A stretch of 64,000 bases of DNA, taken from positions 62,001 to 126,000 of IMG/VR virus record IMGVR_UViG_3300023199_000204. The stretch is one strand, 5' to 3'. Below are positions 5,892 through 54,570 of the stretch, piece by piece. A program made the translations under genes and the position numbers. The notes under the pieces are model-generated. The model saw only the letters and a program-made list of their open reading frames with translations, had not been told where the DNA came from and did no database searches. How positions within the stretch are numbered: the first letter of the stretch is position 1; every line of letters begins with the position of its first letter.

Positions 5892-5901
5892 GGGATTTTA
5901 A

Positions 5902-20908: not shown

Positions 20909-20961
20909 CTTGCCGATATAATTCAAGTATTGAAGTCGGTTAAAAACTGAAAGGAGTAATA

Positions 20962-21756: not shown

Positions 21757-21912
21757 ATGAGCAATAACAATTCTAATCGTCGTCAAATAAACATACGCCT
21801 GGAGCGGGAACTATATGATTTTCTTGTAAAATATTCTAAAAAAGAATATAAAACAATCACAGCAGTTGTAAGAGAAATGATAGCTAATTTGTATAAAAAT
21901 TCTCAAAGATAA
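21757..21912 (+). CDS. Ribbon-helix-helix (Arc/CopG-like) DNA-binding protein, 51 aa
   Basis: AAAGGAG RBS before ATG 21757; RQINIRLERELYDFLVKYSKKEYKTITAVVREMI fits the beta-alpha-alpha RHH pattern. Confidence 0.75.
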   Translation: MSNNNSNRRQINIRLERELYDFLVKYSKKEYKTITAVVREMIANLYKNSQR

Positions 21913-27445: not shown

Positions 27446-28389
27446 GCAAAAGAGTTATACCAAAGGGAAAATGTAGTATGTGTGACTCTTTTGCCAAACT
27501 TCCTAAAAATCCAAAAGAAATAGGTAGAATTTGTGAAAAATGTTATAGGCTAAATATTCAGCCAAAAATAAAATGTTCCATTTGTGGTAAATTGAAAATA
27601 ATTCACAAGGACACTTTTTGTCTAAAATGTTATAAAATTACATATGAACCTCCAAAGCACATCTGCTTTATATGTAAAAATAAATGTATATCTAATAAAA
27701 AAACTAGTTCAGGTCCAGTTTGTTTAAAATGCTATGATAAGAACTTTAAACCCAAAAAAAATTGTGAAAATTGTAAAAGAATAAAAGTAGTTAAAAAATA
27801 CATTAATTTTAAGCCGTTATGTGGGGGATGTGCCTCTAATTTTATAAAAAAACAAAAATGTGTAGAATGTAATAATATTAGGAAGATAAATAAAATAACA
27901 GTTAAGGGGACAGTTTGCGGAAAGTGTTATAATAAAAATCATAAACCAAAGCATAGATGTACTAGGTGTAAAAATATAAAATATTTAGCATCTGCCTCGC
28001 CCAATCTTTGTTTTAATTGTTATTACATTAAAAAAAGGAAAGAAGATTATAAATTTTATATTTTAACCAATTTAAGAAATAGTGTGAGAAGTGCTTTTAA
28101 CAAATATTCAAAGACGGGCAAGATAATAAATAGTTCATCTTATGGAATAAATTATAAAAAAATAATAGAACATCTTGGTAATTGTCCAGGGGAAAGTAAA
28201 GAATATCATATTGATCATATAATACCTTTGTCTGCTTTTGATTTAAATGATCAAATACATATTAAAGCAGCATTTTCTCCTGAAAACCATCAGTGGCTTA
28301 AAATAGAGGATAATTTAAAAAAGAGCAATAAATATGATAAAAATAAATTTGATAAACTAATTATGAAATATAAGGAAGGAAAGTTATGA
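27442..28389 (+). CDS. HNH homing-type endonuclease with six N-terminal CxxC..CxxC units
   Basis: YHIDHIIPLSAFDL...ENHQWLKIEDNLKKSNKY; 12 CxxC motifs; ATGA overlaps at both ends. Confidence 0.85.
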   Translation: MSKRVIPKGKCSMCDSFAKLPKNPKEIGRICEKCYRLNIQPKIKCSICGKLKIIHKDTFCLKCYKITYEPPKHICFICKNKCISNKKTSSGPVCLKCYDKNFKPKKNCENCKRIKVVKKYINFKPLCGGCASNFIKKQKCVECNNIRKINKITVKGTVCGKCYNKNHKPKHRCTRCKNIKYLASASPNLCFNCYYIKKRKEDYKFYILTNLRNSVRSAFNKYSKTGKIINSSSYGINYKKIIEHLGNCPGESKEYHIDHIIPLSAFDLNDQIHIKAAFSPENHQWLKIEDNLKKSNKYDKNKFDKLIMKYKEGKL

Positions 28390-37949: not shown

Positions 37950-37966
37950 TTAGAGGGATAAATAAA

Positions 37967-38059
37967 ATGAATTTTACATTTGGAATTATAACTGGCGGAA
38001 ATGCTGAGGACAAAATAAAGGAAATAATAAAATCTATATATGAGGAAGTTGTTAGATGA
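37967..38059 (+). pseudogene. 30-aa stub duplicating the N-terminus of the glycosyltransferase at 39178
   Basis: MNFTFGIITGGNAEDKIKEIIKSIYEEVVR* vs MNFTFGVITAGNKTYIENIIKSIENE; own AGAGGGA RBS; its TGA overlaps the ATG of the nuclease. Confidence 0.85.
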
Positions 38060-39177
38060 CTTACATATCTGAAACAATTTTATTGTATGAGTGGGACTAT
38101 AATAAAAACATAGGATTAAATCCTAATAAAATAAAACAAGGTAGCAATAAAAAAGTATGGTGGAAATGTAATATTTGTAGTCAAAATTGGAAAGCAATTG
38201 TTAAAAACAGGTCAAAAGGGTCAAAATGCCCATACTGTATTGGAAGAAAAATTTATGAAAAAAATTGTTTATCAACAACTCATCCAGAACTAATTAAAGA
38301 ATGGGATTTTTCTAAAAACATTATATCTCCTAATGATATAAGTTTTGGAAGCCATAAAAGAGTATGGTGGAAATGTAAAAGCAAACATGAGTGGAGAGTA
38401 TCTATAAATAATAGAACAAGTCATAACTATGGATGCCCATATTGCACAAATAGAAAAGTTTGCGAAGATAATTGTTTAGAGACAAATTTTCCTAAAATAG
38501 CAAAAGAATGGAATTATAACAAAAATGGTGATCTAACTCCAAAAAATGTAATTTTCGGAAGTGGAAAAAAAGTATGGTGGAAATGTAAAAGCGGTCATGA
38601 ATGGAAGACTACTATAGTTAATAGGACAAGACTTAAAAATAATTGTCCTTATTGTTGTAATCAAAAAGTTTGTAATGATAATTGCCTATCAACAACTCAT
38701 CCAGAGTTTTTAAAAGAATGGAATTATATTAAAAATAAATTATCCCCCTATGATGTAGTTGCCGGTAGCAGTAAAAAAATTTGGTGGATATGTAAATGCG
38801 GACATGAATGGCGAGCTACTTTAAAAAATAGGACCAATAAAAATAGAAGCTGTATTAAGTGTTATAATAATAGGGTTTCTAATATTTCTCAAAAATGGTT
38901 AGATTTATTATCTGTCCCAAACAAGTTTAGAGAAATTAAAATTAATGTTAATAATAATAAATATATATTTGCTGATGCTTTTTATAACAACACTATATAT
39001 GAGTTTTACGGATGCTTTTGGCATGGATGTCCAATTTGTTTTCCAGAAGGAATTAATAAAGTTAATAAAAAGCCTTTTAAAACTTTATATTATGAAGTAG
39101 GAGAAAGAAATAATCTAATACTTTCATCTAATTATGAGTTAAAAAGCATTTGGGAATGTGATTTTAAGGAGAGATAA
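38056..39177 (+). CDS. Zinc-ribbon-repeat (x4) Vsr-like nuclease; putative homing endonuclease
   Basis: 4 KEW..KN..GS.KKVWWKC..HEW..R..CPYC units; ADAF...IYEFYGCFWHGCP. Confidence 0.8.
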   Translation: MTYISETILLYEWDYNKNIGLNPNKIKQGSNKKVWWKCNICSQNWKAIVKNRSKGSKCPYCIGRKIYEKNCLSTTHPELIKEWDFSKNIISPNDISFGSHKRVWWKCKSKHEWRVSINNRTSHNYGCPYCTNRKVCEDNCLETNFPKIAKEWNYNKNGDLTPKNVIFGSGKKVWWKCKSGHEWKTTIVNRTRLKNNCPYCCNQKVCNDNCLSTTHPEFLKEWNYIKNKLSPYDVVAGSSKKIWWICKCGHEWRATLKNRTNKNRSCIKCYNNRVSNISQKWLDLLSVPNKFREIKINVNNNKYIFADAFYNNTIYEFYGCFWHGCPICFPEGINKVNKKPFKTLYYEVGERNNLILSSNYELKSIWECDFKER

Positions 39178-39903
39178 ATGAATTTTACCTTTGGAGTTAT
39201 AACGGCGGGAAATAAAACATATATTGAAAATATTATTAAATCTATTGAAAACGAAAATATTCCTAATTATGAAATTATAGTAGTTGGCGGAAATCCAATA
39301 AAAAATATTTGTCATATACCATTTAATGAAAGTAAAAAGAAAATGTGGATTACTAAAAAGAAAAACCTAATAACTGAAAATGCTAAATATGAAAATATAG
39401 TTTATCTTCACGATTATATTAAACTAATGCCTGGTTGGTATAATGGTTTTAAAATATTTGGTAATGATTTTGATGTTTGTATGACCAAAATGGAGACATC
39501 AAGTGGAAAAAGGTATCGAGATTGGAGTTTATGTGCTTGGGCGCCTATTTTAGATTTAATAGGAGAGGAGAATAGATATGAAAGGCTTCTTCCGTATAAT
39601 GAAACCAGATTGACAAAAATACAATACATTTCTGGTGCTTACTGGGTTGCCAAAAGAGATTTTATGGTTAAGTATCCTTTAGATGAAGAGTTGGTTTGGG
39701 GGAGATCAGAAGATATTGAATGGTCTTATAGGGCACGAAAAGCCTGTAATTTTAAAATGAATGCTCACTCCTCTGTAAAGTTGTTAAAAGAAAAGGATCC
39801 GAGTTTTATCCTCGCGTCACAAAGAACAATAGATTTGTGCGTGGAGAATTTGGATTTAATTATGGAAAGAAATGAAAAGAAATATGAGGAAACTTGGAAA
39901 TGA
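39178..39903 (+). CDS. GT2-like glycosyltransferase
   Basis: NYEIIVVG, WITKKKN, VYLHDY, YPLDE.L.WG.SEDIEW. Confidence 0.7.
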   Translation: MNFTFGVITAGNKTYIENIIKSIENENIPNYEIIVVGGNPIKNICHIPFNESKKKMWITKKKNLITENAKYENIVYLHDYIKLMPGWYNGFKIFGNDFDVCMTKMETSSGKRYRDWSLCAWAPILDLIGEENRYERLLPYNETRLTKIQYISGAYWVAKRDFMVKYPLDEELVWGRSEDIEWSYRARKACNFKMNAHSSVKLLKEKDPSFILASQRTIDLCVENLDLIMERNEKKYEETWK

Positions 39904-40376
39904 AATTTATTTCGCATAGAGGAAACATAGATGGTCCAAATCCCGAAAGAGAAAATGATCCAGAATACATACAAGAAGCTCTTGATAAAGGGTTTGAAGT
40001 AGAAGTTGATGTTTGGTTTATTAATGGAGATTTTTATTTGGGACACGATTATGGTCAATATAAAATAACCAATCCAGATTTGCTATATGATAAAAGGGTA
40101 TGGTGCCACGCCAAACATATAAAAGCTTTGAAAGAAATGATTGAAGAAAATATACATTGTTTCTGGCATCAAAATGATAATTATACTTTAACATCTAATA
40201 AATATATTTGGGCATATCCTTTAAAGATATATAATCCACATACAATAGCTGTTTTGCCAGAGAACAATAATGTAATTCCAGAACATCTTGTTAAATGTGT
40301 AGGAATATGTAGTGATAATATAGCTTATTATAAAAAAGAATTTGAGTTGATAAGATTAACCAAGGAGATAAAATGA
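39900..40376 (+). CDS. Small glycerophosphodiester-phosphodiesterase-like (PLC-like) protein
   Basis: ISHRG...EN...IQEAL..GFEVEVDVW..LGHD; ATG at 39900 overlaps the upstream TGA. Confidence 0.75.
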   Translation: MKFISHRGNIDGPNPERENDPEYIQEALDKGFEVEVDVWFINGDFYLGHDYGQYKITNPDLLYDKRVWCHAKHIKALKEMIEENIHCFWHQNDNYTLTSNKYIWAYPLKIYNPHTIAVLPENNNVIPEHLVKCVGICSDNIAYYKKEFELIRLTKEIK

Positions 40377-41239
40377 AAGTATCGGTAGTTATTTCAGTAT
40401 GTGATAATAGGAAAGATATGTTTAAAAGGTCTTTGGACACCTGGTCCAAACAAACTATGGACAAAAAAGATTTTGAATTAGTTGTGGTTGATGATGCGGA
40501 AAGAAGTGATTTAAAGAAACTATGTAAAACTTACAGTAAAGAGCACAGGCTTCAAATACAATATTTAAACATCGACAATTCAAAAGCAGATGTGCCAGTA
40601 ACAACATTTTTACCTATTGTGAGCAATAATGTTGGAATGAGAATCGCAAAAGGAGATGTTGTTGTAATTACTGGTCCTGAGACACTACAGGCAGAAGATA
40701 ATTTAAAAATAGCTCACACAATGGTCGCAAGAAAAGAATGTGCCTATGGGCTTGTATATCGTTCAAATATACAGTTTGTTGATTATATTGATTCGAAATG
40801 GGATGAGCTTAAAGACAAACCTTTTGAAAATTTATTTAACATTGCTGGAGCTAAAGCTGACTGTAGAACAAGACCACCACATCCTCCAAGTTATTGGTAT
40901 TTAATGGCTGTAAAAAAAGAGTATGTAGAGAAAATTGGAGGAGTTGATGAGGCTTTTGCTAAAGGTTTCTGCGCCGAAGACGATGACTTCTCAAACAGGA
41001 TGGAAAGATCAGGAGTTATGCCTGTATTTGAACATAAAATGATTGGCATTCATCAGGATCATAGCAGAGAGGATAGGTTAGATGCTAAACATTCAATACG
41101 AAAAACACCAGAAGGGCAGAGGTTAAGAAGAAAAAACACTATGTTGTGGAAATCAAACACTGTAAAAGGCGTGGTTGAGGTTAATAAAGACCATACTTGG
41201 GGTGATACAAAAGTTATTGTAAAACACGAAACTTGGTAA
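40373..41239 (+). CDS. GT2 glycosyltransferase, paralogue of the 25074 C-terminal domain
   Basis: VSVVISV, ELVVVDD, VVVITGPETLQ, GGVDEAF, AEDDDF, IHQDH shared with 25074..26615. Confidence 0.88.
   Translation: MKVSVVISVCDNRKDMFKRSLDTWSKQTMDKKDFELVVVDDAERSDLKKLCKTYSKEHRLQIQYLNIDNSKADVPVTTFLPIVSNNVGMRIAKGDVVVITGPETLQAEDNLKIAHTMVARKECAYGLVYRSNIQFVDYIDSKWDELKDKPFENLFNIAGAKADCRTRPPHPPSYWYLMAVKKEYVEKIGGVDEAFAKGFCAEDDDFSNRMERSGVMPVFEHKMIGIHQDHSREDRLDAKHSIRKTPEGQRLRRKNTMLWKSNTVKGVVEVNKDHTWGDTKVIVKHETW
41180..41236. repeat. Direct repeat copy 1 (3' end of GT2 gene)
   Basis: 48/57 identical to 48380..48436, exactly 7200 bp downstream. Confidence 0.9.
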
Positions 41240-41251
41240 GAAATGCTAAAA

Positions 41252-41274
41252 TTTTCTACTAATATTGCTATATT
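41252..41274 (+). promoter_or_regulatory. Putative phage-specific promoter motif, copy 2 (TTTTCTACTAATATTGCTATATT)
   Basis: 19/23 identical to 20855..20877; lies in a 72-bp gap 38 nt upstream of ATG 41312. Confidence 0.5.
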
Positions 41275-41311
41275 ATTTTGATATATAAAATATTAGTAAA
41301 AGGTGGATTAA

Positions 41312-41908
41312 ATGGGAAAATTTAGTATAGAATATATGATAAATCAAGCGGTTAGTGGAACAAGTGATATTCATTCTCACTTGTTAACTTTATTTGCATT
41401 GGCCTTAAATATCAAAGCAAAAGTTATAATTGAGTTAGGCGTTAGGGGAGGCGAAAGCACTATTCCATTGTTGTTAGCAGCACAAAAAAATGGTGGAAAA
41501 TTACACTCTGTTGATATAAAAGACCACGGTATAAGTTCAGTCCCTGAAAATTTAAAAAAGTTATGGAAGTTTTATAAAAGTGACGCCATAGAGTTTTTAA
41601 AAAACTGGAAAGTAAAGGCAGATTTGGTTTTTGTTGATGATTGGCACACTTATGATCACGTTAAAAAAGAATTAGAAATAATTGAAACTTTCATAACACC
41701 TTCTAGTTTAGTAATATTACACGATTCAATGTATTACAATTATGAGCCATATTATCATATGGATTTAAACGCAACTGGGCAATGGGCAGATGGAGGCCCT
41801 TATAGGGCTCTATCTGAGCTTGATAAAAATTCTTGGGAATTCTCTACTATACCTTCTTGTCACGGCTTAACCATTTTAAGAAAAAAGCCTAATAAGAAGT
41901 TTAAATAA
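41312..41908 (+). CDS. Class I SAM methyltransferase (Methyltransf_24-like)
   Basis: IELGVRGGEST, LHSVDI, LVFVDDWHTYDHV, ILHD. Confidence 0.85.
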   Translation: MGKFSIEYMINQAVSGTSDIHSHLLTLFALALNIKAKVIIELGVRGGESTIPLLLAAQKNGGKLHSVDIKDHGISSVPENLKKLWKFYKSDAIEFLKNWKVKADLVFVDDWHTYDHVKKELEIIETFITPSSLVILHDSMYYNYEPYYHMDLNATGQWADGGPYRALSELDKNSWEFSTIPSCHGLTILRKKPNKKFK

Positions 41909-42958
41909 ATGTCTTTTAAAAATATTTTAAAAAAACATAATGATTTGCCACAGGCTCAAAAAGTATTGTTTGTTCCTGTTAATACGCGACATAACGGAAT
42001 GCCGCAGGGCTTTGTAAATAATGGATTTCAGACATATTCTATAAACATTGATAATCCTAGGTTAGATAGAAACAAATATAAAGTTGAAGGTGGCATAAAA
42101 GAAATTGGAGAACTTCTTATAGAAACTTGTAAAAATTTACAACCTAATTGGGTACATATTCCTACCTCTAAACCAGGATTAATAGAGTTAAAAGATGTAA
42201 AAGAGGCAAAAAAAGTGTGTGGCGCAATTTTTACAAGCTGGGCAGGAGATGTTAGAGAAGAACCTTTACCATTTTTTATAGAACTTAGCGAAATAATTGA
42301 TTTTACATTTATCTCTAATGTTGGCCAACTTGATTTATATAGGAAAAATGGATGTAAAAACGTAGATTATTGGCAATACGGAGTGGATGTTAATAAGGCT
42401 AAGCCACTATCTACAAAAGAAAAAGATGTTCTTAAATCTAAATATAATCACGATATAGTATTTTGTGCTAACAGCTATGATGGGTTTCCTGGTTACTATA
42501 TAAGAAAAAGTATAGTTTCAGAAGTTTATAAAAAATATGGATCTAGATTTGCTATTTATGGCAACGGGTGGGATACAATAGCGAAAAATTCTTCAAAACC
42601 TAACATAAAATATTTTGAACAAAATAATGTTTATAATTCATCTAAAATTGTTTTAAGTATTAATAATTTCAATGATATTGAAATGTATTTTTCTGGAAGA
42701 CAGTTATTGGCAATGGCCTCAGGTACATTAACATTATCTCACTATATTCCTGGTTTAGAAAGATATTTTGAAAATGGCAAAGATCTTGTTTGGTTTAAAA
42801 CCGAAGATGAATGTATGAAGTTAATAGATTATTATTTAAATAATGAAGGCGAAGCTAAAAGAATAGGATTAAATGGAAGTGCTAAGGTTCTAAAAGAACA
42901 TTCATATGAAGCTAGAATAAAAGAGTTAGGTATAAAACTAGGATTTATAAATGAGTAG
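41909..42958 (+). CDS. CgeB-like GT-B glycosyltransferase
   Basis: SKIVLSIN....YFSGR.LLAMASG...PGLERYFENGKDLVWF...HSYEARI. Confidence 0.85.
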   Translation: MSFKNILKKHNDLPQAQKVLFVPVNTRHNGMPQGFVNNGFQTYSINIDNPRLDRNKYKVEGGIKEIGELLIETCKNLQPNWVHIPTSKPGLIELKDVKEAKKVCGAIFTSWAGDVREEPLPFFIELSEIIDFTFISNVGQLDLYRKNGCKNVDYWQYGVDVNKAKPLSTKEKDVLKSKYNHDIVFCANSYDGFPGYYIRKSIVSEVYKKYGSRFAIYGNGWDTIAKNSSKPNIKYFEQNNVYNSSKIVLSINNFNDIEMYFSGRQLLAMASGTLTLSHYIPGLERYFENGKDLVWFKTEDECMKLIDYYLNNEGEAKRIGLNGSAKVLKEHSYEARIKELGIKLGFINE

Positions 42959-43712
42959 TAAATATAAACTAAATCCAAAAATTGAAGAAATTTTAACTGA
43001 TAAAAGAGTGGCTTTGGTGGGGCCATCCCCATATCTTATTGGAAGTGGAATGTCTAAAATAATAGATAGCTTTGATGTTGTATGTAGGATTAGAGATATA
43101 CTTCCAAAAAAAGATTTTAGAAATGATCTAGGAACACGAACAGATGTAATTTTTTATAACTGTGCGACTATAAGTGTGCCTCATTATAAAAAGCGTCTTA
43201 AAGAAGCCGAATCTGTTCTCAAAGATATTAAGATGATGATATGCCCTGTGGCTAAGGGGCTTGGTTCTGATGATTGGAAATCTTGGCCTGATGATTTTAT
43301 AGCACCAGTGGTTAAAAACTTTGCTAATGTTAATAAATATAACATTCCGTTTCATTGGATAGGTATTCCAAACTATAGAATATTATATAATGAGGTTGGT
43401 GTGGAGCCAAACACTGGAACTTTAGCTATTAAGGTGCTTTTGAAATATAAAGTAAAAGAGCTTTTTATAACAGGATTTAGTTTCTATGCTGAAGGATCTA
43501 CAGTTTCAAAAGTATACTATCCAGGATATTTGTTAAATGGGTTTGAGCCAAATCCAAAGACCTGGAGCCCTCATAAAGGTCATAATCAAGATATACAAAA
43601 AAAGCATTTTATAAACAATATTTTACCAAGCACTTCAACAAAAGTGATAGTTGATTCTTATTTAAACAACCTATTAAGTCTAAATCACAAAGAAGTAATA
43701 AAAATAAAATGA
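42951..43712 (+). CDS. GT29 (eukaryote-type) sialyltransferase-like protein
   Basis: L-motif-like RVALVGPSPYLIGSGMSKIIDSFDVVCRI...DLGTRTD; S-motif-like PNTGTLAIKVLL....ELFITGFSFY; VS-like GHNQ; next to NeuA/NeuB. Confidence 0.7.
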   Translation: MSSKYKLNPKIEEILTDKRVALVGPSPYLIGSGMSKIIDSFDVVCRIRDILPKKDFRNDLGTRTDVIFYNCATISVPHYKKRLKEAESVLKDIKMMICPVAKGLGSDDWKSWPDDFIAPVVKNFANVNKYNIPFHWIGIPNYRILYNEVGVEPNTGTLAIKVLLKYKVKELFITGFSFYAEGSTVSKVYYPGYLLNGFEPNPKTWSPHKGHNQDIQKKHFINNILPSTSTKVIVDSYLNNLLSLNHKEVIKIK

Positions 43713-44398
43713 AGTTATTAGCTATAATCCCTGCTCGTGGGGCAAGTAAAAGTATAAAGAAAAAAAATATAATAGATTTAAATGGAAACCCATTATTATC
43801 ATATACAATACGTTTTTGTCAAAAGTCCAAAGTAATTAAAAATTGTTATGTATCTACAGAAGATGAAGAAATTAAGGCGGTAGCTCAAAAATATAAAGCA
43901 GCCGTAATAGATAGACCACATAAATATTCTATGGATAATTCTACAGATTATGGCTTTTTAAGCCATTTTTTTAGTATAATTCAATGTGATGAAGTTGCTC
44001 TTATGAGACCAACGACTCCAATTAGAAATTTGGAGTTTGTAGAAAAGGCAGTTAAAAAATATTTTGATATTAAAGACGATATAACTGGGTTTAGAAGTGT
44101 TAATGAAATTAATGAAACTCCTTATAAAGTATTTAAAATAAATAAAAGTGGTATATGCGAAGGATTTTTTGATAATTTTAATAACATAAGTGATTATTCA
44201 AATTTACCCAGACAAAGTTTTCCAAAAACATATAAGCCCAACGGACATATAGATATAGTTAAAAAATTAACTCTAGAGTCTGGTAGTATTTTTGGTAATA
44301 GAATTTATGGTTTCATAGGTAGCAGAATTACAGATATAGATAGTATTGAAGACTTAGAATTCGCAAAATATGAAATAAGTCTAAAGGAGAATAAATGA
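43709..44398 (+). CDS. neuA: CMP-nonulosonate (acylneuraminate) cytidylyltransferase
   Basis: IIPARGASKSIKKKNI..LNGNPLLSY, VSTEDEEI, RPTTP, DIDSIEDL. Confidence 0.93.
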   Translation: MKLLAIIPARGASKSIKKKNIIDLNGNPLLSYTIRFCQKSKVIKNCYVSTEDEEIKAVAQKYKAAVIDRPHKYSMDNSTDYGFLSHFFSIIQCDEVALMRPTTPIRNLEFVEKAVKKYFDIKDDITGFRSVNEINETPYKVFKINKSGICEGFFDNFNNISDYSNLPRQSFPKTYKPNGHIDIVKKLTLESGSIFGNRIYGFIGSRITDIDSIEDLEFAKYEISLKENK

Positions 44399-45231
44399 GT
44401 GTTTTTATTATAGGAGAGATAGGTATTAATCATAATGGATGTATAGATACAGCTTTAGATTTAATAAAAAAGGCTTCAGTCGCTGGATGCGATGCGGTTA
44501 AGTTTCAAAAAAGAACGGTAGATGTAGTGTACTCTAAAGAAGATCTGGATCGGCCTAGAGAGTCGCCTTGGGGAACAACAAATCGGGAACAAAAATACGG
44601 GTTAGAGTTCGGAGAGGAAGAGTATAATAAAATTGATAGTTTTTGTAAAAAGATGAAAATAGAATGGTTTGCTTCCTCTTGGGATGTAAAATCTCAATTA
44701 TTTTTACAAAAATATTCTTTAAACTATAATAAAATTGCTTCTGCTATGTTGACAAATAGAGAGTTGTTGAAAATCGTAGCAGCAGAGAAGAAACATACAT
44801 TTATTTCTACTGGAATGTCTAGTATGGAGCAAATAGATAAGGCTCAGCAAATATTTTTGAAAAATGGATGCCCATATGAATTAATGCATACCACTAGTGT
44901 TTATCCAATGGATCCAGAGGACGCAAATCTAAAAATGATAGAGACTTTACAAAAGAAATTTAATGTGCCAGTAGGTTATTCTGGACACGAGGTTGGTATT
45001 GCTATTAGTTGTGCTGCTGCTGCTCTTGGAGCAACCTCTATTGAGAGGCACATAACATTAGATAGATCTATGTATGGTTCTGATCAGAGTGCATCTTTAG
45101 AAATAGCAGGTCTAGAAAAGCTAGTTAAGTACATAAGAGCAATTGAAAAAGCTATGGGTGACGGAGTTAAAAAAACTACAGATAAAGAGCTTGAAGTTGC
45201 TAAAAAGTTACGGCGGGTAAATACTTTATAA
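44395..45231 (+). CDS. neuB: N-acetylneuraminate synthase family (PEP-dependent), lacking the C-terminal SAF domain
   Basis: IIGEIGINHNG, DAVKFQ, KIASA, ISTGMS, MHTTSVYP, VGYSGHE, IERHITLD, DQSASL; ends at 278 aa. Confidence 0.92.
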   Translation: MSVFIIGEIGINHNGCIDTALDLIKKASVAGCDAVKFQKRTVDVVYSKEDLDRPRESPWGTTNREQKYGLEFGEEEYNKIDSFCKKMKIEWFASSWDVKSQLFLQKYSLNYNKIASAMLTNRELLKIVAAEKKHTFISTGMSSMEQIDKAQQIFLKNGCPYELMHTTSVYPMDPEDANLKMIETLQKKFNVPVGYSGHEVGIAISCAAAALGATSIERHITLDRSMYGSDQSASLEIAGLEKLVKYIRAIEKAMGDGVKKTTDKELEVAKKLRRVNTL

Positions 45232-45668
45232 TGGCATCTATAAGACATATAGGAATTACCGTTAGTAATTTATCAAAATCTTTAAATTTTTATGAAAGCT
45301 ACTTTGGTTTTAAAATTCAAAGAAAAATGGAAGAATCTGGTGAAGTTCTTGATAATTTTTCCGCATTAAAAAATGTAGAAGTAATAACAGTAAAGCTTAG
45401 TGATAATAAGGAGCAGCTTTTAGAACTTCTTTGTTATAAATCTCACCCTAATAATAAAGTTGAGTTAAATTTGAAAAGACAAATTTGTTATGTAGGTTGC
45501 TCACATTTTGCTTTAACTGTAGATGATTTAGATGAGATATATAATAAAATGTGCGAAAACGGGATTATATTTAATTACCCTCCTCAAATTTCATCAGATA
45601 ATAAGGTAAAGATTGCTTTTTGTAAGGATCCAGATGGAGTTTTAATAGAATTGGTTGAGGAACTATGA
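45231..45668 (+). CDS. VOC/glyoxalase-fold protein
   Basis: IRHIGITVSNLSKSLNFY, SHFALTVDDL, DPDGVLIELVE. Confidence 0.9.
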   Translation: MASIRHIGITVSNLSKSLNFYESYFGFKIQRKMEESGEVLDNFSALKNVEVITVKLSDNKEQLLELLCYKSHPNNKVELNLKRQICYVGCSHFALTVDDLDEIYNKMCENGIIFNYPPQISSDNKVKIAFCKDPDGVLIELVEEL

Positions 45669-46351
45669 GTATATTAAAAAATAAAAGGGTATTAATAACT
45701 GGAGCATCTAGTGGCCTGGGATATGAATTAGCAAAGGAATTATGTCATAAAAACTGTGATTTGTTTTTAACTGGAAGGAGTTGTTTAAAAAATATTCCAA
45801 AAGACATATATAGTTTATATTTCCCTTGCGATTTAACAGATTCTACTAAACTAGCTGAATTAATCAAAGAATGTAAAAAGAAGCTAGGTGGAATAGATAT
45901 CCTAATTAATTCTGCCGGAACATTCTCTATTTCAGAAAATGAAAATCTAGAAGATTTAGAATATAATCTAGAGCTAAATGTTATTGTTCCATTTAAACTA
46001 TACAAGGCGTTTATAGATGATATGATTGAAAATAAATGGGGAAGAATAGTTAATATAGGGTCATCTTCTTGCTATAAAGGATCAAAAGATACTTTAACAT
46101 ATTGTACATCGAAACACGCCTTGTTAGGTTTTACTAGATCTTTATATGATAGACATAGAAATGATGATATTAAGGTTTTTTGTATTTCTCCAGGATCTAT
46201 GAAAACTAAAATGGCACAAATTGACCACAGGCAAGACTTTAGTACTTTTTTAGATCCTAAAGAAGTTGCTAAATACATATCTTTTGTTTTGGAGTTTAAT
46301 TCAAACTTAATTTCTGAAGAATTAAGATTAAATAGGATGGTAGTTAAATAA
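45665..46351 (+). CDS. SDR oxidoreductase
   Basis: TGASSGLG, DILINSAG, YCTSK. Confidence 0.9.
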   Translation: MSILKNKRVLITGASSGLGYELAKELCHKNCDLFLTGRSCLKNIPKDIYSLYFPCDLTDSTKLAELIKECKKKLGGIDILINSAGTFSISENENLEDLEYNLELNVIVPFKLYKAFIDDMIENKWGRIVNIGSSSCYKGSKDTLTYCTSKHALLGFTRSLYDRHRNDDIKVFCISPGSMKTKMAQIDHRQDFSTFLDPKEVAKYISFVLEFNSNLISEELRLNRMVVK

Positions 46352-46352
46352 T

Positions 46353-47042
46353 ATGACAAAATACACTGAAGTAATATATCCTGAAGACAAAGGTAATACT
46401 TATCCAGATAAATATTTTAAACATATATGTGAAAATTATTTACTTAAAGATTTATATAACAAAAAGATTTTAGATATAGGGTGTGGAAAAGGCACAGCTA
46501 TGAATTATTTTTCAAAATATGGTCTTAATTCATTTGGAATTGATTGCCGAGATGAGGGTTTAGATAATTTTAAACTATGTAATATAGAAAATGAATCAAT
46601 TCCTTACCCAGACAATACTTTTGATATAGTATATAGTAAATCAGTAATAGAGCACGTTATTAATTCTGATAATTTTATTGATCAATCAATAAGAGTTTTA
46701 AAGCCTGGTGGTCTTTTCATATGTTTAACCCCTGACTGGGGATCACAATATAAATATTTTTGGGACGATTACACTCACGTAAAACCATTTACCAGGAAAT
46801 CATTACAAAATTTACTTTTAATTAAGAATTGCGTTGATGTTGAATGTAACTATTTTTATCAACTTCCTTTTTTATGGAAATATCCTAGGCTGGTGTTTAT
46901 ATCAAAAGTCATATCATTTTTATTTCCAGATGATTTGAAATGGAAAACAAAAGCACAAAGAAATACCGAAGATAGAAAGTTAATTAGATTTTCCAAAGAA
47001 AAAATGCTATTGGCTAGGGGATTTAAAGCAAATTATGAATAA
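46353..47042 (+). CDS. Class I SAM methyltransferase
   Basis: ILDIGCGKG, PYPDNTFD, VIEHV, RVLKPGG. Confidence 0.9.
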   Translation: MTKYTEVIYPEDKGNTYPDKYFKHICENYLLKDLYNKKILDIGCGKGTAMNYFSKYGLNSFGIDCRDEGLDNFKLCNIENESIPYPDNTFDIVYSKSVIEHVINSDNFIDQSIRVLKPGGLFICLTPDWGSQYKYFWDDYTHVKPFTRKSLQNLLLIKNCVDVECNYFYQLPFLWKYPRLVFISKVISFLFPDDLKWKTKAQRNTEDRKLIRFSKEKMLLARGFKANYE

Positions 47043-47757
47043 CTTATTTTCTGTAAAAGACAAGGTCGTAATTATTACTGGCGGTGCGAGAGGAAACGGT
47101 TTAGCATTAACAGAAGGTTTTAGGGCTCACGGAGCTATAGTTTACTCCTGTGATATTTTAAATAAAAATAAAAAAGATCCTAATCATTTTATTTTTAATA
47201 TAAAAGACGTATATAGTCTAGCAAAATTTGTTGATCAAGTATATGAAAATGAAAAACACATAGATGTATTAATTAATAATGCTGGCGTTACAAATAGCGG
47301 ATATACCGATAGTGCTTGGGATGAAACTTATCAAATAAACTTAAAATCACTTTTTAATATTACTAGATTGTGCTTAAAATATATGGTTCAAAAAACCCGA
47401 GGCTCTATAATAAATATTACTAGTTTAAACGCAGAGGTTTCTTTTCCAAATAATCCTTCCTATATAGCTACAAAGGGAGCTATTAAGCAGCTTACCAAAG
47501 CAATTGCCAGAGATTATGGCAAATATAATATACGGGCAAATAATTTAGGTCCAGGCTATATCATTACAGATATGACGGCAACCAGTTATAAAAACGAGGA
47601 AATTAGGACTAATAGGGCTAATAGAACAATGCTTGGAAGATGGGGTTGTTCAGAAGATTTGGTTGGTCCGGCAATATTCTTAGCTTCTAGGGCCTCTTCT
47701 TATATTACTGGAGAAGACATATATGTAGATGGCGGATGGCTAGCGAAGGGAGAATAA
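47035..47757 (+). CDS. SDR oxidoreductase
   Basis: TGGARGNG, DVLINNAG, YIATK, NNLGPG, VDGGW. Confidence 0.9.
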   Translation: MNNLFSVKDKVVIITGGARGNGLALTEGFRAHGAIVYSCDILNKNKKDPNHFIFNIKDVYSLAKFVDQVYENEKHIDVLINNAGVTNSGYTDSAWDETYQINLKSLFNITRLCLKYMVQKTRGSIINITSLNAEVSFPNNPSYIATKGAIKQLTKAIARDYGKYNIRANNLGPGYIITDMTATSYKNEEIRTNRANRTMLGRWGCSEDLVGPAIFLASRASSYITGEDIYVDGGWLAKGE

Positions 47758-48374
47758 ATTTGAAAGATTTTAAAAAATATATAAAAGCTCATATTAAAAA
47801 TAGTTTGTCAATACTAAATAAGGTTAAAAAAGAATGTAATAAAGATATATGTAAAGCTATAGATATAATCCTTAATTCATTATTAGCGGGGAACAAATTA
47901 ATGTTATGTGGAAATGGTGGAAGTGCCGCTGATTGTCAACATATGGCTGCTGAATTCATAAGCTCATTCTCTAAAAATATAAATAGAAAGGGTATTCCTG
48001 CAATAGCATTAACAACAGATACTTCAATTTTAACGGCATATTCTAATGATTTTGGATATGATGGTGTTTTTAAAAGACAAGTTGAAACTTTAGGAAAACC
48101 AGGTGATGTTTTGTTAGGAATAAGTACCAGTGGAAACTCAAAAAATATCATTCTAGCTTTGGAGGCTGCGTCTAACATTGGGATTAAAAGAATATCACTT
48201 ACTGGAAAAGATGGAGGCTTGGTTAAAAATGTTTCAGAAGTATGTATAAAAGTCCCTAGTTCGGACACTATGTATATACAAGAATGTCATTTAACAATAG
48301 AACATATAATATGTGCTATGGTTGAAGAGAAAATAGTAAATAATAAAAATTTTCTTATCAAGGGAGTTATATAA
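47736..48374 (+). CDS. gmhA: GmhA-like SIS-domain sugar-phosphate isomerase
   Basis: CGNGGSAADCQHMAAE, TAYSND, STSGNSKN, IQECH; alternative TTG start at 47760. Confidence 0.88.
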   Translation: MASEGRINLKDFKKYIKAHIKNSLSILNKVKKECNKDICKAIDIILNSLLAGNKLMLCGNGGSAADCQHMAAEFISSFSKNINRKGIPAIALTTDTSILTAYSNDFGYDGVFKRQVETLGKPGDVLLGISTSGNSKNIILALEAASNIGIKRISLTGKDGGLVKNVSEVCIKVPSSDTMYIQECHLTIEHIICAMVEEKIVNNKNFLIKGVI

Positions 48375-48442
48375 TGAAAGTTAATAAAGACTATACTTGG
48401 AGAGATCTTAAGGTTATTGTAAAACACGAAATATGGAGTTAA
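48374..48442 (+). pseudogene. 22-aa stub repeating the C-terminus of GT2 40373..41239 (direct repeat copy 2)
   Basis: MKVNKDYTWRDLKVIVKHEIWS* vs ...VNKDHTWGDTKVIVKHETW*; TAATG-coupled to the upstream gene. Confidence 0.88.
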
Positions 48443-48445
48443 ATA

Positions 48446-49675
48446 ATGCACGAGAAAAAATGTTCTAAATGTAAAAATATATTAGATTTTTCTAATTTTA
48501 GTAAAAGTACATCTCGTGGGGGTGATAAATTTAGTCTTAGCTATTATTGTAAATCTTGTGTAAGTGAATATAATAAAGAAAAAAATGTTTATAAAAACTA
48601 TTATATAAAAAATAAAAAGGCATGCTTAGAAAAGTGTAAAAGATGGAGAGAAAAAAATATAGAGTATAGGAGAGAATACGATAGAGAATATAGTAAAAAA
48701 AATATAAAGAAAAAGCTAGCATATAAAAAAAAAAAGTATAGAGAAGATGAAACATATCGGCTCAAAGAAAATCTACGCTCTTCCCTGCAGCGTGCTTTTA
48801 AAACTCAAAATACACAAAAAATGTTTTTATCTAAAACTTATGGAATAAATTATGATGAAATAATTAATTATCTTGGACCAAAACCAGAGAGTAATTATGA
48901 AATAGACCATATATTACCTTGTTCATCTTTTAATCATAATAACCCTATGGAAATATGGATGTGTTGGAATAAAGACAATTTTCAATGGCTTCCATTAACA
49001 GAAAATCGTAGGAAAAATAACTACTATAATGATGAATATTATTTAAAATATTATAAAGAAAAAGCAAATATATATGTAAAAAATAATTTTGAGAACTTAA
49101 CTTCTAAATTACATTTAGGATGCAGCAATGTATATTTAGAAAATTATCTAAATATAGACATCAATCCAACATATTATTCTGGTTTTGTAGAGCAAAATTT
49201 TATTGAAAATGTTAAAACTAATTTTAATAATTATTATAGATATGATTTTTGTAAAGGTCCAGAATATTCAGTGGTAGATGTTGGGGCAGACATTAGCAAA
49301 CATATTCCCATTGATAGTAATACTTGTGATGAAGTTGTGATGCTTCACGTTTTGGAACATTTTCCTAAATATGTTGTAGGAAATGTTTTAGATGAAATAA
49401 ACAGAGTTTTAAAATATGGTGGGGTATTTGTTGTAGGAGTTCCAGATATTATTGAAACTTCAAAATTACTTTTAAAAGCGTCTACTCCCGAGGAAGAAAA
49501 CTGGGCATTAAGGCTAATTGATGGTTCCCAACGTAATGAATGGAGTCATCATTTTATGAGTTTCAGTAAAAAGAGTTTAATTAGATTATTAGAAGAACAC
49601 GGGTTTGGAGAGTTTGAAGATTTACCTAATATAAACTTTTATCCTGCTGTTCATTTGAAAGCAAGGAAGTTATAA
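48446..49675 (+). CDS. In-frame fusion of HNH homing endonuclease and class I methyltransferase
   Basis: N-terminal CSKC..CKSC and YEIDHILP..NFQWL..EN; C-terminal KLHLGCS..NIDI, HVLEH, RVLKYGG; no stop between the domains. Confidence 0.85.
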   Translation: MHEKKCSKCKNILDFSNFSKSTSRGGDKFSLSYYCKSCVSEYNKEKNVYKNYYIKNKKACLEKCKRWREKNIEYRREYDREYSKKNIKKKLAYKKKKYREDETYRLKENLRSSLQRAFKTQNTQKMFLSKTYGINYDEIINYLGPKPESNYEIDHILPCSSFNHNNPMEIWMCWNKDNFQWLPLTENRRKNNYYNDEYYLKYYKEKANIYVKNNFENLTSKLHLGCSNVYLENYLNIDINPTYYSGFVEQNFIENVKTNFNNYYRYDFCKGPEYSVVDVGADISKHIPIDSNTCDEVVMLHVLEHFPKYVVGNVLDEINRVLKYGGVFVVGVPDIIETSKLLLKASTPEEENWALRLIDGSQRNEWSHHFMSFSKKSLIRLLEEHGFGEFEDLPNINFYPAVHLKARKL

Positions 49676-50673
49676 TGAAAATAAATAATACTGATAAAAT
49701 TTTGGTGACTGGCGGACGAGGCTTTCTTGGAAAGCACGTTGTTCAAGAATTGAAAAATAGGGGCTATGAAGATATAACTATTGCGCCTCCAAGTTCTCAA
49801 TTAGATTTAAGAAACAAAGATTTAGTTGAAGGATATTTTCAGGCATTAAAGCCTGATGGAGTAATTCATTTGGCAGCTTTCTGCGGTGGAATTGGAAAAA
49901 ATCAAGAAAACCCGAACAAAATGTTGAGAGATAATATAAGTATTAATATGAATGTTCTTGATTCATTTAGAAATACTGGTGGAAAACTTGTTGCCGTTGG
50001 CTCTGTTTGTTCTTACCCTAAAAACTGTCCTGTGCCTTTTAAAGAAGAAGATTTGTTTTCAGGATTTCCAGAGGAAACTAATTCTCCTTACGGCATAGCG
50101 AAAAGAGTTATGCTTATGGATATGTTGTCTTATGGTAATAAATGGTATAAAGGTAGAGAGGTGTTTTTGATGCCTGCTAATCTTTATGGACCAGGAGATG
50201 GATTTTTTAAGGATGGGGCTCACGTAATTCCTGATATTATATCAAAAATACATACGACTATCGAAGCAAAAAAAGCATATCAGGCAACTCATCCTGGCGA
50301 TAAGTATAAATATAATTATCTTGAATGTTGGGGTGATGGAAGTCCAACTAGAGAATTCCTATATGTCCAGGACGCAAGCAGAGCCATTGTGGCGGCTTTG
50401 GAGAAGGCAGATGATGTTGGACCATATAATATTGGAAACGGCGTTGAGACGAGTATTAAAGAGCTTGTGGAGAAAATTGCTGAAATTATGAAGTTTGATG
50501 GAGAAATAAGGTGGGACGCAAATAAGCCAAATGGTCAGCCAAAAAGATGTTTGAATGTTAATAAAGCAAAAGAAGCATTTGGTTTTAAAGCAGAAGTTGA
50601 TTTAGATTTAGGATTAAATGAAACAATTTTATGGTTCAAAGAATTAGTAAAAGGAAAAATTAAAAAGGATTAA
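49675..50673 (+). CDS. fcl: GDP-L-fucose synthase family
   Basis: GGRGFLG, HLAAFCGGI..N, CSYPK, YGIAKR, NLYGP, WGDGSPTREFLY, KPNGQPKR. Confidence 0.92.
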   Translation: MKINNTDKILVTGGRGFLGKHVVQELKNRGYEDITIAPPSSQLDLRNKDLVEGYFQALKPDGVIHLAAFCGGIGKNQENPNKMLRDNISINMNVLDSFRNTGGKLVAVGSVCSYPKNCPVPFKEEDLFSGFPEETNSPYGIAKRVMLMDMLSYGNKWYKGREVFLMPANLYGPGDGFFKDGAHVIPDIISKIHTTIEAKKAYQATHPGDKYKYNYLECWGDGSPTREFLYVQDASRAIVAALEKADDVGPYNIGNGVETSIKELVEKIAEIMKFDGEIRWDANKPNGQPKRCLNVNKAKEAFGFKAEVDLDLGLNETILWFKELVKGKIKKD

Positions 50674-50676
50674 TTA

Positions 50677-51654
50677 ATGAAAAAAACAGCGTTAATAATT
50701 GGCGTATGCGGTCAAGCGGGTTCATATTTAGCAGAGTTTTTACTAGAAAAAGACTATCGTGTTGTGGGAGTAATGAGACGAAATGCGACCGCTGATCTTG
50801 GAAACGCCACACATTTAGAGAATGATATTGAAATTGTTGAAGGAGACATTACTGATTTTAGCAGTATATTGAAAATTATTCAACTAACCCGTCCTCAAGA
50901 ACTATATTCATTGGCAGCACAGTCTCACGTTAAAACAAGTTTTGATCAGCCAATTGCTTCTGTAAATATTAATTTACTTGGTGTGGTTAACATACTTGAA
51001 TCTGTTAAAACTTTGGGGTATTCTACAAGAATTGCCCAAGCATCGACTTCTGAATTATGGGGAGCAACTGCTCCACCACATAATGAAGATAGTTATATGG
51101 CTCCAAGGAGCCCTTATGCTATTGCCAAACTTGGTGCCCATTGGTTTGTTAAAATGTATCGGGAAGCATATGGGATGTATGCTTGTAATGCTATTATTCA
51201 TAACTATGAAAGCCCTAGGCGTGGTCCGAAGTTTGTAACTCGTAAAATTACATTAGGAGTTGCCGAATGTTTAAAAGACCCAGACTTTAGGCTTAAGCTT
51301 GGTAATATAAAAGCAAAAAGGGATTGGTCACACGCAAAAGATATGGTCCGTGGTTGGTGGACGATGCTTCAACAGCCAGAGCCAGATGATTTTGTATTTG
51401 GTTCTGGTCAAATGAGGAGCGTGGAAGAATTTTTAGAAAAAGCATTTTCAATTGTCGAATTAGATTGGCAAGACAAAGTAGATATAGATAGGTTCCATAT
51501 GCGACCACTTGAAGTGGATGCCCTATGTGCCGATACATCGAAAGCAAAGGAAATATTGAACTGGGAGCCAGAGATAAGTTTTGATGAGCTGGTGGAAGAA
51601 ATGGTTAAATCAGATTGTAAATTATTGGGAGTAGGTAGTGAAAATTATAAATAG
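50677..51654 (+). CDS. gmd: GDP-mannose 4,6-dehydratase
   Basis: GQAGSYLAEFLL, LAAQSHV..SF, QASTSE, SPYAIAK, ESPRRG..FVTRKI, RDWSHAKD. Confidence 0.95.
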   Translation: MKKTALIIGVCGQAGSYLAEFLLEKDYRVVGVMRRNATADLGNATHLENDIEIVEGDITDFSSILKIIQLTRPQELYSLAAQSHVKTSFDQPIASVNINLLGVVNILESVKTLGYSTRIAQASTSELWGATAPPHNEDSYMAPRSPYAIAKLGAHWFVKMYREAYGMYACNAIIHNYESPRRGPKFVTRKITLGVAECLKDPDFRLKLGNIKAKRDWSHAKDMVRGWWTMLQQPEPDDFVFGSGQMRSVEEFLEKAFSIVELDWQDKVDIDRFHMRPLEVDALCADTSKAKEILNWEPEISFDELVEEMVKSDCKLLGVGSENYK

Positions 51655-51919
51655 TGGATTTGAAATTGGAGACAAAATAAAACATACTAAAGAATACATA
51701 GAGTGTTGTACTAATAAAAACTATAATGCTTCAGACATATTTATAGTTTACGATGTCCTTTTTTCCAGAGGTTATGAAAAATTAACAATTTGTTTTCAAG
51801 ATTCGTGGGCAATAAAAAATAATAAACACTATTCAGTTGATATTTCCTATGATAGAAAATTTTATCAGAAAGTAAATTATAAATATTTTCAAGAAAAAGT
51901 ATTTGAAAAGGTGAATTAA
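51638..51919 (+). CDS. Small tandem paralogue 1 (FxIGD-type family)
   Basis: MKIINSGFEIGDKIKH...KVFEKVN. Confidence 0.7.
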   Translation: MKIINSGFEIGDKIKHTKEYIECCTNKNYNASDIFIVYDVLFSRGYEKLTICFQDSWAIKNNKHYSVDISYDRKFYQKVNYKYFQEKVFEKVN

Positions 51920-54493: not shown

Positions 54494-54570
54494 ATTTTTT
54501 CTTTTTCGATGTCATTAATAACTTAACAAATCGAGAAAAATTTTCAAGAAAAAAAAATAATGGAGAAAAA

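What the first reader, a model, noticed from the sequence alone, without database searches (positions are those of the whole stretch)
41180..48442. 7.2 kb nonulosonic-acid cassette bounded by a 57-bp direct repeat and carrying its own promoter motif
Seen: the last codons of GT2 gene 40373..41239 (41180-41236) recur exactly 7200 bp downstream (48380-48436, 48/57 identical). The second copy is a translated 22-aa stub that keeps coupling to the next gene. The enclosed block starts with a copy of the putative promoter motif (41252). It holds a methyltransferase, CgeB-like GT, GT29-like, NeuA, NeuB, VOC, two SDRs, a second methyltransferase and a SIS isomerase. Inference: a self-contained 'capping-sugar' module inserted into the 3' end of a GT gene with duplication of the gene end, as integrative elements do. 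It could be excised or swapped by recombination between the repeats, changing the virion glycotype.
Basis: partly seen in the sequence, partly recalled or inferred. Interest (0 to 1): 0.68.

Follow-up and report, generated by a model that had tools for sequence, protein, structure and literature searches.

The report
Sugar-gene cassette with orphaned gene end
In a giant phage's sugar-coating gene cluster, a ten-gene block for a sialic-acid-like sugar sits just after a glycosyltransferase gene, and a 22-codon leftover of that gene's end marks its old junction with the next gene: a scar of module shuffling, not the repeat of a jumping element.

Summary
41180-41236 and 48380-48436 match at 48 of 57 bases and are the only two copies in the 316-kb virus record. 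Both junctions are also assembled from a second sample.

In 8 relatives the GT2 orthologue lies directly before a 190-aa methyltransferase, then an epimerase and GDP-mannose dehydratase. So the 22-codon stub (48374-48442) marks where GT2's end belongs.

Relatives show every state of this site:
- no cassette (L006, L008, L009, L018);
- the same ten-gene block elsewhere (L028: before a full-length GT2; L029: before the methyltransferase);
- a different ulosonic-acid cassette directly after GT2 (L110);
- two full-length GT2 genes flanking another sugar cassette (97.5-kb contig).

The block's proteins are far closer to L028 and L029 than the flanking genes are, so it is an exchanged module.

No recombinase lies in or beside it. 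The repeats are 84% alike, with a longest identical run of 19 nt. The stub carries the ribosome-binding site of the next gene, whose front half is an HNH homing endonuclease.

Best reading: illegitimate recombination placed the module after GT2 and duplicated GT2's end or all of GT2. It is not an excisable element.

The parts
40373..41239 (+). Intact GT2-family glycosyltransferase (288 aa). Its ATG overlaps the stop of 39894..40376 (ATGA).
   Evidence: Pfam Glycos_transf_2. More than 120 homologues at 50-66% identity. It keeps every invariant column of the 32-sequence alignment.
41180..41236 (+). Left repeat: the last 19 codons of GT2 (VNKDHTWGDTKVIVKHETW).
   Evidence: The tail motif aNxdHxWGDxKVIxxHE is family-wide.
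41240..41311 (+). 72-nt spacer, unusual in this tightly packed gene row. It holds the motif AAAATTTTCTACTAATATTGCTATATTAT (core CTACTAATAT at 41256-41265) and the ribosome-binding site of the first cassette gene.
   Evidence: No sigma-70 match on the + strand.
41312..48374 (+). Ten-gene cassette: 41312 Methyltransf_24/CmcI; 41909 Glyco_trans_1_2; 42951 GT29-like; 43709 cytidylyltransferase (PseF-like); 44395 NeuB (short form, no SAF domain); 45231 VOC; 45665 SDR; 46353 methyltransferase; 47035 SDR; 47736 GmhA-like SIS isomerase.
   Evidence: Pfam and NCBIfam. Same block and order in L029, 3' half in L028. The NeuB/NeuA/VOC/SDR/MT core occurs in many of the 80 other IMG/VR contigs kept by the NeuB scan.
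48374..48442 (+). 22-codon stub ORF: ATGAAA, then the GT2 tail, its own stop and one extra codon. The Shine-Dalgarno AAGGGAG lies 6 nt upstream. GGAG inside codons 20-21 serves the next gene.
   Evidence: R replaces the G of WGD, which is invariant in the 32-sequence alignment and present in every tail listed.
48380..48436 (+). Right repeat, 48 of 57 bases identical to the left one.
48446..49675 (+). Fusion gene. Residues 1 to about 218 are an HNH homing-endonuclease module (to about 49099). From 'KLHLGC' onward it is the family's 190-aa methyltransferase.
   Evidence: phrog_1035 E = 6e-15. Paralogues at 28030-28371 and 55117-55425. Relatives' methyltransferases align to residues 221-409 only. 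No fused relative in 5.8 billion proteins. Fusion point read.
49675..51654 (+). Epimerase (49675..50673) and GDP-mannose 4,6-dehydratase (50677..51654): the conserved block that follows GT2 and the methyltransferase in relatives.
   Evidence: Pfam; synteny.
37956..38037 (+). Second gene-end stub in the same locus: ribosome-binding site plus about 27 codons copied from the 5' end of 39178..39903 (39168-39245). It lies just before the DUF4379/HNH-like gene 38056..39177.
   Evidence: L013 has the neighbours of this insertion directly adjacent.

Best explanation
The window lies in a roughly 33-kb glycan-synthesis island of a tubulin-encoding jumbo phage, directly after its baseplate genes. In this phage family a GT2 gene normally abuts a 190-aa methyltransferase gene. 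The last codons of GT2 hold that gene's Shine-Dalgarno sequence.

The ten-gene NeuB-type block is a horizontally exchanged sugar module. In this phage it came to lie between GT2 and the methyltransferase by illegitimate recombination with a related genome, not by site-specific recombination. That event duplicated GT2 sequence. Either only GT2's end was duplicated, or the whole gene was duplicated and one copy later lost 267 codons in frame. The data do not decide between these two.

What remains is a 22-codon ORF at the old junction. It probably persists because it passes ribosomes from the SIS gene to the next gene and carries that gene's GGAG.

Shown: the repeat, the synteny, the module's separate history, and the absence of a recombinase. 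Inferred: the recombination route, the coupling role, and that the motif is a promoter.
For: (1) GT2 directly precedes the 190-aa methyltransferase in L003, L006, L007, L008, L009, L018, L028 and the 97.5-kb contig. So the stub marks the canonical end of GT2.

(2) Four of five relatives examined have GGAG or GAGG in GT2's last codons. The stub keeps GGAG 7 nt before the next ATG. The intact copy has lost it.

(3) The module has its own history. Window against L028 or L029, cassette proteins are 58-82% identical and the flanking GT2, methyltransferase, epimerase and dehydratase are 34-60%. The backbone relatives L003 and L007 have NeuB at only 44-46%. Unrelated IMG/VR phages reach 67% and carry no GT2 of this family.

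(4) Every state of the slot exists in relatives: empty (L006, L008, L009, L018); another ulosonic-acid cassette right after GT2 (L110/L111, which fall in the window's GT2 clade); the same cassette before a full GT2 (L028); and GT2-cassette-GT2-methyltransferase.

(5) The right edge of the block shared by the window, L028 and L029 is the end of SIS, exactly where the stub starts.

(6) The stub starts ATGAAAGT, as GT2 genes do. In coordinates of the intact copy, the loss would be exactly 267 codons.

(7) No recombinase gene is present.
Against: - No close relative (above about 80% identity) was found, so the event itself is not seen and its route is not resolved.
- ATGAAA also starts the methyltransferase genes of relatives and 17% of ORFs here. 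It therefore does not prove that a whole second GT2 was ever at this site.
- The region upstream of the stub is no more GT2-like than other gene starts.
- The stub touches an HNH homing gene, and a second stub in this locus also sits right before a homing-type gene. That fits the rival model.
- The coupling role and the promoter role are untested.
Confidence: 0.6

Rival explanations
1. The GT2 tail was carried in by the homing endonuclease. An ancestor already had the cassette joined directly to the methyltransferase (SIS-TAATGAAA...). An HNH homing gene then arrived from a close relative in which it sat between GT2 and the methyltransferase. One-sided repair copied the HNH gene plus about 66 nt of the donor's GT2 end, and joined this to the broken methyltransferase start. 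On this view the stub is donor flank, not a trace of the cassette's arrival.
For: The stub lies 3 nt before the HNH module, which no relative has at this site. Relatives' methyltransferase genes start ATGAAA, and the fusion keeps the methyltransferase from its codon 2 (AAA TTA CAT). The same locus holds another [gene stub]-[homing-type gene]-[intact gene] arrangement at 37956-39245. L029 shows the same cassette leading to the methyltransferase without a GT2 between them.
Against: It needs an earlier, very precise placement of the cassette between GT2's stop and the methyltransferase's start. The few bases after the two stop codons look alike (TAAGAAATGC and TAAATAATGC), which this model leaves to chance; that similarity is weak, about the 2-4% level. 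No donor with GT2-HNH-methyltransferase was found.
Confidence: 0.2
2. The block is an integrative element that entered GT2's 3' end by site-specific recombination. It carries att-like repeats and can excise or swap by recombination between them.
For: The layout resembles islands that duplicate the 3' end of their target gene. Empty sites and other cargo exist in relatives.
Against: There is no integrase, transposase or resolvase in or next to the block. The repeats are 84% alike, with a longest identical run of 19 nt. No joint or deleted form appears in three runs, though only contigs were laid. The same block sits at other positions, without such repeats, in L028 and L029.
Confidence: 0.05
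3. Chance similarity or a misassembly.
For: The genome is AT-rich (32% G+C), so short repeats are common.
Against: E = 2.7e-12 in the genome, with about 3e-7 chance pairs expected. The match is in frame with the GT2 tail motif. Both junctions were assembled independently from a second sample.
Confidence: 0.01

Closest known systems
Mosaic joints in phage genomes made by illegitimate recombination between co-infecting relatives (the Hendrix model of phage mosaicism; my own knowledge)
   Same: A functional gene module is placed at a gene boundary. There is a short duplicated scar and no dedicated recombinase. Relatives carry other modules at the same place.
   Different: Here the scar is kept as a small translated ORF that overlaps the signals of both neighbouring genes.
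Bacterial O-antigen and capsule loci, where variable sugar cassettes lie between conserved flanking genes (my own knowledge)
   Same: Conserved anchor genes (GT2, methyltransferase, epimerase, GDP-mannose dehydratase) flank a slot that is empty or filled with different sugar pathways in relatives.
   Different: This is a phage locus next to baseplate genes. The glycan's target is unknown. Exchange through homologous flanks was not shown.
Genomic islands and prophages that integrate into the 3' end of a gene and duplicate it as attL and attR (my own knowledge)
   Same: A direct repeat made of the target gene's 3' end brackets the inserted block, and the gene stays intact on one side.
   Different: There is no integrase. 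The repeats are diverged, and the target is a protein-coding gene. See the membership test.
Free-standing homing endonuclease genes of T4-like phages ('intronless homing'; my own knowledge)
   Same: HNH and DUF4379-type endonuclease genes sit between or fused to genes and are absent from the same sites in relatives. One is flanked by a duplicated gene end.
   Different: No cleavage or homing was tested. The HNH module here is fused in frame to a methyltransferase.
Virion glycosylation by mycobacteriophages (Freeman et al. 2023, PMC10527164, as cited in PMC12619734)
   Same: The phage encodes its own glycosyltransferases close to structural genes.
   Different: Those phages have one or two glycosyltransferases. 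This island holds roughly 30 sugar-pathway and transferase genes, including a NeuB-type branch. No glycan has been shown here.

Membership tests
Integrative element with att-type direct repeats | A site-specific recombinase (integrase, resolvase or transposase) encoded in or next to the element | tested here: not met
   Pfam, NCBIfam and PHROGs scans of all genes from 38056 to 52572 find none. The only mobile-type genes are HNH and DUF4379 endonucleases.
Integrative element with att-type direct repeats | Identical or nearly identical core repeats at both ends | tested here: not met
   48 of 57 bases match (84%). The identical runs are 12, 8, 1, 3, 2, 19 and 3 nt long.
Integrative element with att-type direct repeats | An empty target site in relatives | tested here: met
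   GT2 directly precedes the methyltransferase, with no NeuB cassette in the fetched flanks, in L006, L008, L009 and L018.
Integrative element with att-type direct repeats | Excised or deleted forms in the population | tested here: inconclusive
   No joints were found in runs X1-X3. Only contigs were available, and contigs drop rare variants. The stretch laid could not span both repeats.
Nonulosonic-acid (NeuB/NeuA-type) biosynthesis cassette | A NeuB-family PEP-condensing synthase | tested here: met
   PF03102 scores 234.6 bits. NCBIfam NeuB_NnaB scores 243 bits, below its equivalog cut-off of 399.65. The protein has 278 aa and lacks the C-terminal SAF domain.
Nonulosonic-acid (NeuB/NeuA-type) biosynthesis cassette | A CMP-sugar synthetase (cytidylyltransferase) | tested here: met
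   PF02348 E = 3.4e-17. PseF scores 99 bits, below its cut-off.
Nonulosonic-acid (NeuB/NeuA-type) biosynthesis cassette | Enzymes that make the hexosamine precursor (2-epimerase, or the dehydratase, aminotransferase and acetyltransferase of the Pse and Leg routes) | tested here: not met
   None lies inside the block. It has instead a GmhA-like isomerase, two SDRs, a VOC protein and a methyltransferase. The sugar made is therefore unknown.
Nonulosonic-acid (NeuB/NeuA-type) biosynthesis cassette | A matching transferase (sialyltransferase-like) | tested here: met
   PF00777 Glyco_transf_29 scores 32.1 bits against a cut-off of 23.
Relic of an internally deleted paralogue | Homology to both ends of the parent gene, in frame | tested here: inconclusive
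   The 3' end is clear. At the 5' end only ATGAAAGT matches, shared with 4 of 317 ORFs. ATGAAA is shared with 55 of 317 ORFs and with methyltransferase genes of relatives. The upstream region is not specifically similar.
Relic of an internally deleted paralogue | A full-length copy at the same place in relatives | tested here: met
   L028 has SIS, a 128-aa gene, then a full GT2 and the methyltransferase. The 97.5-kb contig has GT2, a cassette, GT2 and the methyltransferase.
HNH homing endonuclease gene (residues 1 to about 218 of 48446..49675) | An HNH nuclease domain | tested here: met
   phrog_1035 E = 5.9e-15. Pfam HNH_4 E = 5e-4, below its gathering score. Two paralogues lie in the window.
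HNH homing endonuclease gene (residues 1 to about 218 of 48446..49675) | Presence or absence polymorphism at the same site in relatives | tested here: met
   The methyltransferases of all relatives are about 190 aa with no N-terminal module. No fused homologue was found.
HNH homing endonuclease gene (residues 1 to about 218 of 48446..49675) | Site-specific cleavage of the allele that lacks the gene | not testable with these tools
   This needs an enzyme assay or a co-infection cross.

The most novel reading that the evidence does not exclude
The junction after GT2 is a recurrent exchange slot for 'capping' ulosonic-acid cassettes in a family of tubulin-encoding jumbo phages. It would be a phage counterpart of bacterial O-antigen loci. 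Homing endonucleases that nest in the island would supply the double-strand breaks that drive module swaps and leave gene-end stubs. Virion or tail-fibre glycotype would then vary between close relatives.
Probability: 0.25. Interest if true: 0.65.

Novelty: new member of a known kind. Interest (0 to 1): 0.4.

Why it matters
The repeat itself is an ordinary recombination scar. It does pin down one joint of a module swap in a very large phage glycan island. It also shows why such a scar can persist: the gene's end carries the next gene's translation signals.

The comparative picture is the more useful result. At one conserved anchor in related jumbo phages, the slot is empty, holds a NeuB-type cassette, or holds a KdsA-type cassette. 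The NeuB core is shared with many unrelated phage contigs. This points to glycan diversification in phages by cassette exchange. It could be tested once an isolate or deeper metagenomes are at hand.

Tried and rejected
- Homology beyond the 57-nt core. After the stop codons (41248-41302 against 48457-48507), the score is reached by 13 of 300 shuffles and by 2% of all genome windows. I do not count it.
- Homology upstream of the two ATGs. 64% of other gene starts score as well. Rejected.
- Sigma-70 promoter in the spacer. None on the + strand, and hits in the region equal the shuffle expectation.
- Near-identical relatives. Megablast against phage records found nothing. The single-protein scan of viral contigs with GT2 found no relative. 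The 19-mer shared by both copies found nothing in viral contigs. In metagenome contigs it found 8 stretches that match none of the window's proteins or DNA, so these are chance hits. The GT2 profile scan of genome contigs found nothing.
- A fused HNH-methyltransferase relative. None found.
- Extending L029 upstream to see whether GT2 precedes its cassette. Only the same 7.3-kb contig is on record.
- Reads across the deletion junction. Only Logan contigs were available, and the 6,000-letter limit cannot span both repeats. No joints were seen. The one loose end, at 48431, is the left copy cross-mapping. This is no evidence against rare variants.
- A genome-wide census of short direct repeats next to homing genes. 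Apart from the pair at 37956/39168, which repeat finder found, nothing clear emerged.
- A G+C shift over the cassette. None: 28-32% throughout.
- The careful GT2 tree did not finish. The quick tree was used.


Full report
**Where the window lies.** The window is bases 62001-126000 of a 316,473-bp IMG/VR virus record with 32% G+C. Genes 5463-9153 match baseplate families. From about 21.9 to 54.5 kb, one strand carries a dense row of glycosyltransferase and sugar-nucleotide genes. A tubulin homologue and a helicase follow. Relatives are contigs of 300-460 kb, so this is a jumbo phage with a very large glycan island.

**The observation.** 41180-41236 and 48380-48436 match at 48 of 57 bases, ungapped, and start 7200 nt apart.
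- They are the only two copies in the genome (E = 2.7e-12). About 3e-7 chance pairs are expected.
- The left copy is the last 19 codons of GT2 (40373..41239).
- The right copy lies in a 22-codon ORF, 48374..48442. Its ATG overlaps the stop of the SIS gene (TAATG). AAGGGAG lies 6 nt upstream of the ATG. Its stop lies 3 nt before the ATG of 48446..49675.
- A contig from a second sample spans the left junction with 1 mismatch in 1837 nt. A contig of run X2 spans 48272-49453 without a difference.

**What the tail is.** GT2 belongs to a family with more than 120 members at 50-66% identity. Its C-terminal motif, aNxdHxWGDxKVIxxHE, runs through the whole family.
- The two copies differ at nine bases in five codons. 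Four of those codons change the residue.
- The stub has R where G is invariant in the family. So it is no longer under selection as an enzyme end.
- It also keeps features that the intact copy has lost: the usual I in HE[IV]W, an ending like L003's 'HDIWSI', and a GGAG.

**Synteny.** I fetched the surroundings of GT2 orthologues and compared their ORFs with the window's proteins.
- In L003, L006, L007, L008, L009, L018, L028 and a 97.5-kb JGI contig, GT2 is followed at once by a methyltransferase of about 190 aa. In all but L006 an epimerase and a GDP-mannose dehydratase come next; in L006 the next gene is the w52862 homologue. This methyltransferase matches residues 221-409 of the window's 48446..49675.
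- The stub therefore marks the place where GT2's end normally lies.
- In four of five relatives read, GT2's last codons hold the GGAG or GAGG of the methyltransferase gene. The stub has GGAG 7 nt before the next ATG. The intact copy, now followed by a 72-nt spacer, has lost it.

**The cassette as a module.**
- L029 carries the same ten genes in the same order, from the end of the Methyltransf_24 gene to SIS, at 63-78% identity. A 101-aa gene follows, then the methyltransferase, with no GT2 between.
- L028 carries NeuB, VOC, SDR, methyltransferase, a SPASM protein and SIS at 58-82%. A 128-aa gene follows, then an intergenic motif, then a full-length GT2 and the methyltransferase.
- In both, the flanking genes are much less similar to the window's: GT2 56%, methyltransferase 43-51%, epimerase 34%, dehydratase 60%.
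- L007 is among the closest by tubulin (72%). Its NeuB is only 46% identical.
- Eighty other IMG/VR contigs carry NeuB at up to 67%, many of them next to the same kinds of genes, without this GT2.
- The module therefore has a history of its own. Its shared right edge is the end of SIS, where the stub begins.

**States of the slot.**
- No NeuB cassette lies in the fetched flanks of L006, L008, L009 or L018.
- In L003, L007 and L028 a NeuB-type cassette lies before GT2.
- L110/L111 have a GT2 in the window's clade on the quick tree and backbone proteins up to 71% identical. There a different eight-gene block follows GT2 directly and runs up to the dehydratase, with no tail stub. It holds DHDPS-like, GT29, DAHP_synth_1 (KdsA-like), a methyltransferase, two unknown genes, CTP_transf_3 and a PAPS-reductase-like gene.
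- In the 97.5-kb contig two full-length GT2 genes, 65% identical, flank an FdtA/DegT/dehydratase/nucleotidyltransferase cassette. The second one abuts the methyltransferase.

**How the stub arose.** No recombinase is present, so I take the joint to be illegitimate. Three routes fit.
- (a) An insertion whose two joints lay about 60 nt apart in the recipient. GT2's end, which both GT2 and the next gene need, was therefore copied twice.
- (b) An unequal crossover that gave GT2-cassette-GT2-methyltransferase, as in the 97.5-kb contig. An in-frame loss of 267 codons followed. The stub starts ATGAAAGT like GT2 genes.
- (c) Arrival of the tail as flank of the HNH homing gene.

Routes (a) and (b) cannot be told apart. 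ATGAAA also starts methyltransferase genes and 17% of ORFs. The upstream region is not specifically GT2-like. I give (a) and (b) together 0.6.

**The HNH rival.** The first 218 or so residues of 48446..49675 are an HNH endonuclease (phrog_1035, E = 6e-15). It has two paralogues in the window and is fused to the methyltransferase at its second codon. No relative has it. A second stub lies at 37956-38037. It copies the ribosome-binding site and about 27 codons of 39178..39903, and sits right before the DUF4379/HNH-like gene 38056..39177, which L013 lacks. That precedent makes route (c) credible, at 0.2.

**Timing and excision.** The two tails are 84% identical in DNA, while orthologues in L028 and L029 are only about 70% identical in protein. 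The two copies therefore split much later than these phages did. With a longest identical run of 19 nt, recombination between them should be rare. No deleted form was seen, but only contigs could be laid.

**The motif.** AAAAYCTAYYAATAT occurs at 20818, 20859 and 41256 in the window. Seven of its 18 genome hits are in non-coding DNA (p = 0.003). It also lies in intergenic DNA of L010, L012 and L028. It is a family-conserved intergenic element. A promoter role is inferred, not shown.

**Limits.**
- No RNA data exist for this phage.
- The host, the glycan and its target are unknown.

Noticed in passing
window 37956-38037 and 39168-39245, flanking 38056..39177: A second gene-end duplication. A 30-codon ORF (MNFTFGIITGGN...) copies the ribosome-binding site and the first 27 or so codons of 39178..39903. 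It lies just before a gene with four DUF4379 zinc fingers and a nuclease-like C-terminal end. L013 has the neighbouring genes directly adjacent.
   Followed up: partly
window 48446-49105: An HNH endonuclease module is fused in frame to the methyltransferase at its second codon (..TCT AAA TTA CAT = SKLH). No fused relative exists among 5.8 billion proteins. Paralogues lie at 27442..28389 (C-terminal part) and 54889-55452.
   Followed up: partly
window 54472-55452: A cysteine-rich zinc-finger and HNH endonuclease gene is split by a single in-frame stop at 54886-54888. The 137-aa ORF and the next 188 codons are in one frame.
   Followed up: no
window 20944-21739: The 1.16-kb 'intergenic' gap holds a LAGLIDADG-type homing endonuclease broken over three frames (..LGDGHLKRG.. 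and ..LWIGDGS). A 49-nt stretch (21405-21453) recurs at 22336-22384, inside 21912..22814.
   Followed up: no
window 20780-20890; L028:3940-4030: A hairpin followed by TTTTTCTTTC[G/A]AAAA(T)CTATCAATAT is shared almost base for base by the window and L028. In L028 it lies before GT2. In the window it lies at the head of the glycan island. It looks like a terminator-promoter unit of this phage family.
   Followed up: partly
window 44395-45231: The NeuB protein is a short form of 278 aa that lacks the C-terminal SAF domain. The matches in the 80 IMG/VR contigs have the same length.
   Followed up: no
window 25074-26615: The C-terminal half of this 513-aa protein is a paralogue of the 40373 GT2 (43% identity, tail included). 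Relatives L017 and L110 have the same long form.
   Followed up: no
L027 (genome 158500-163000, outside the window): A stretch whose ORF list shows only short overlapping frames, and which looked G+C-rich by eye (G+C was not computed). It is bracketed by a 46-nt direct repeat, 93% identical (genome 159962-160007 and 161534-161579). No Rfam family matches.
   Followed up: partly
genome 134-212 kb (outside the window), e.g. 170830-171231: Many copies of a 69-nt (23-aa) repeat unit occur in several genes on the minus strand, 80-93% identical between genes.
   Followed up: no
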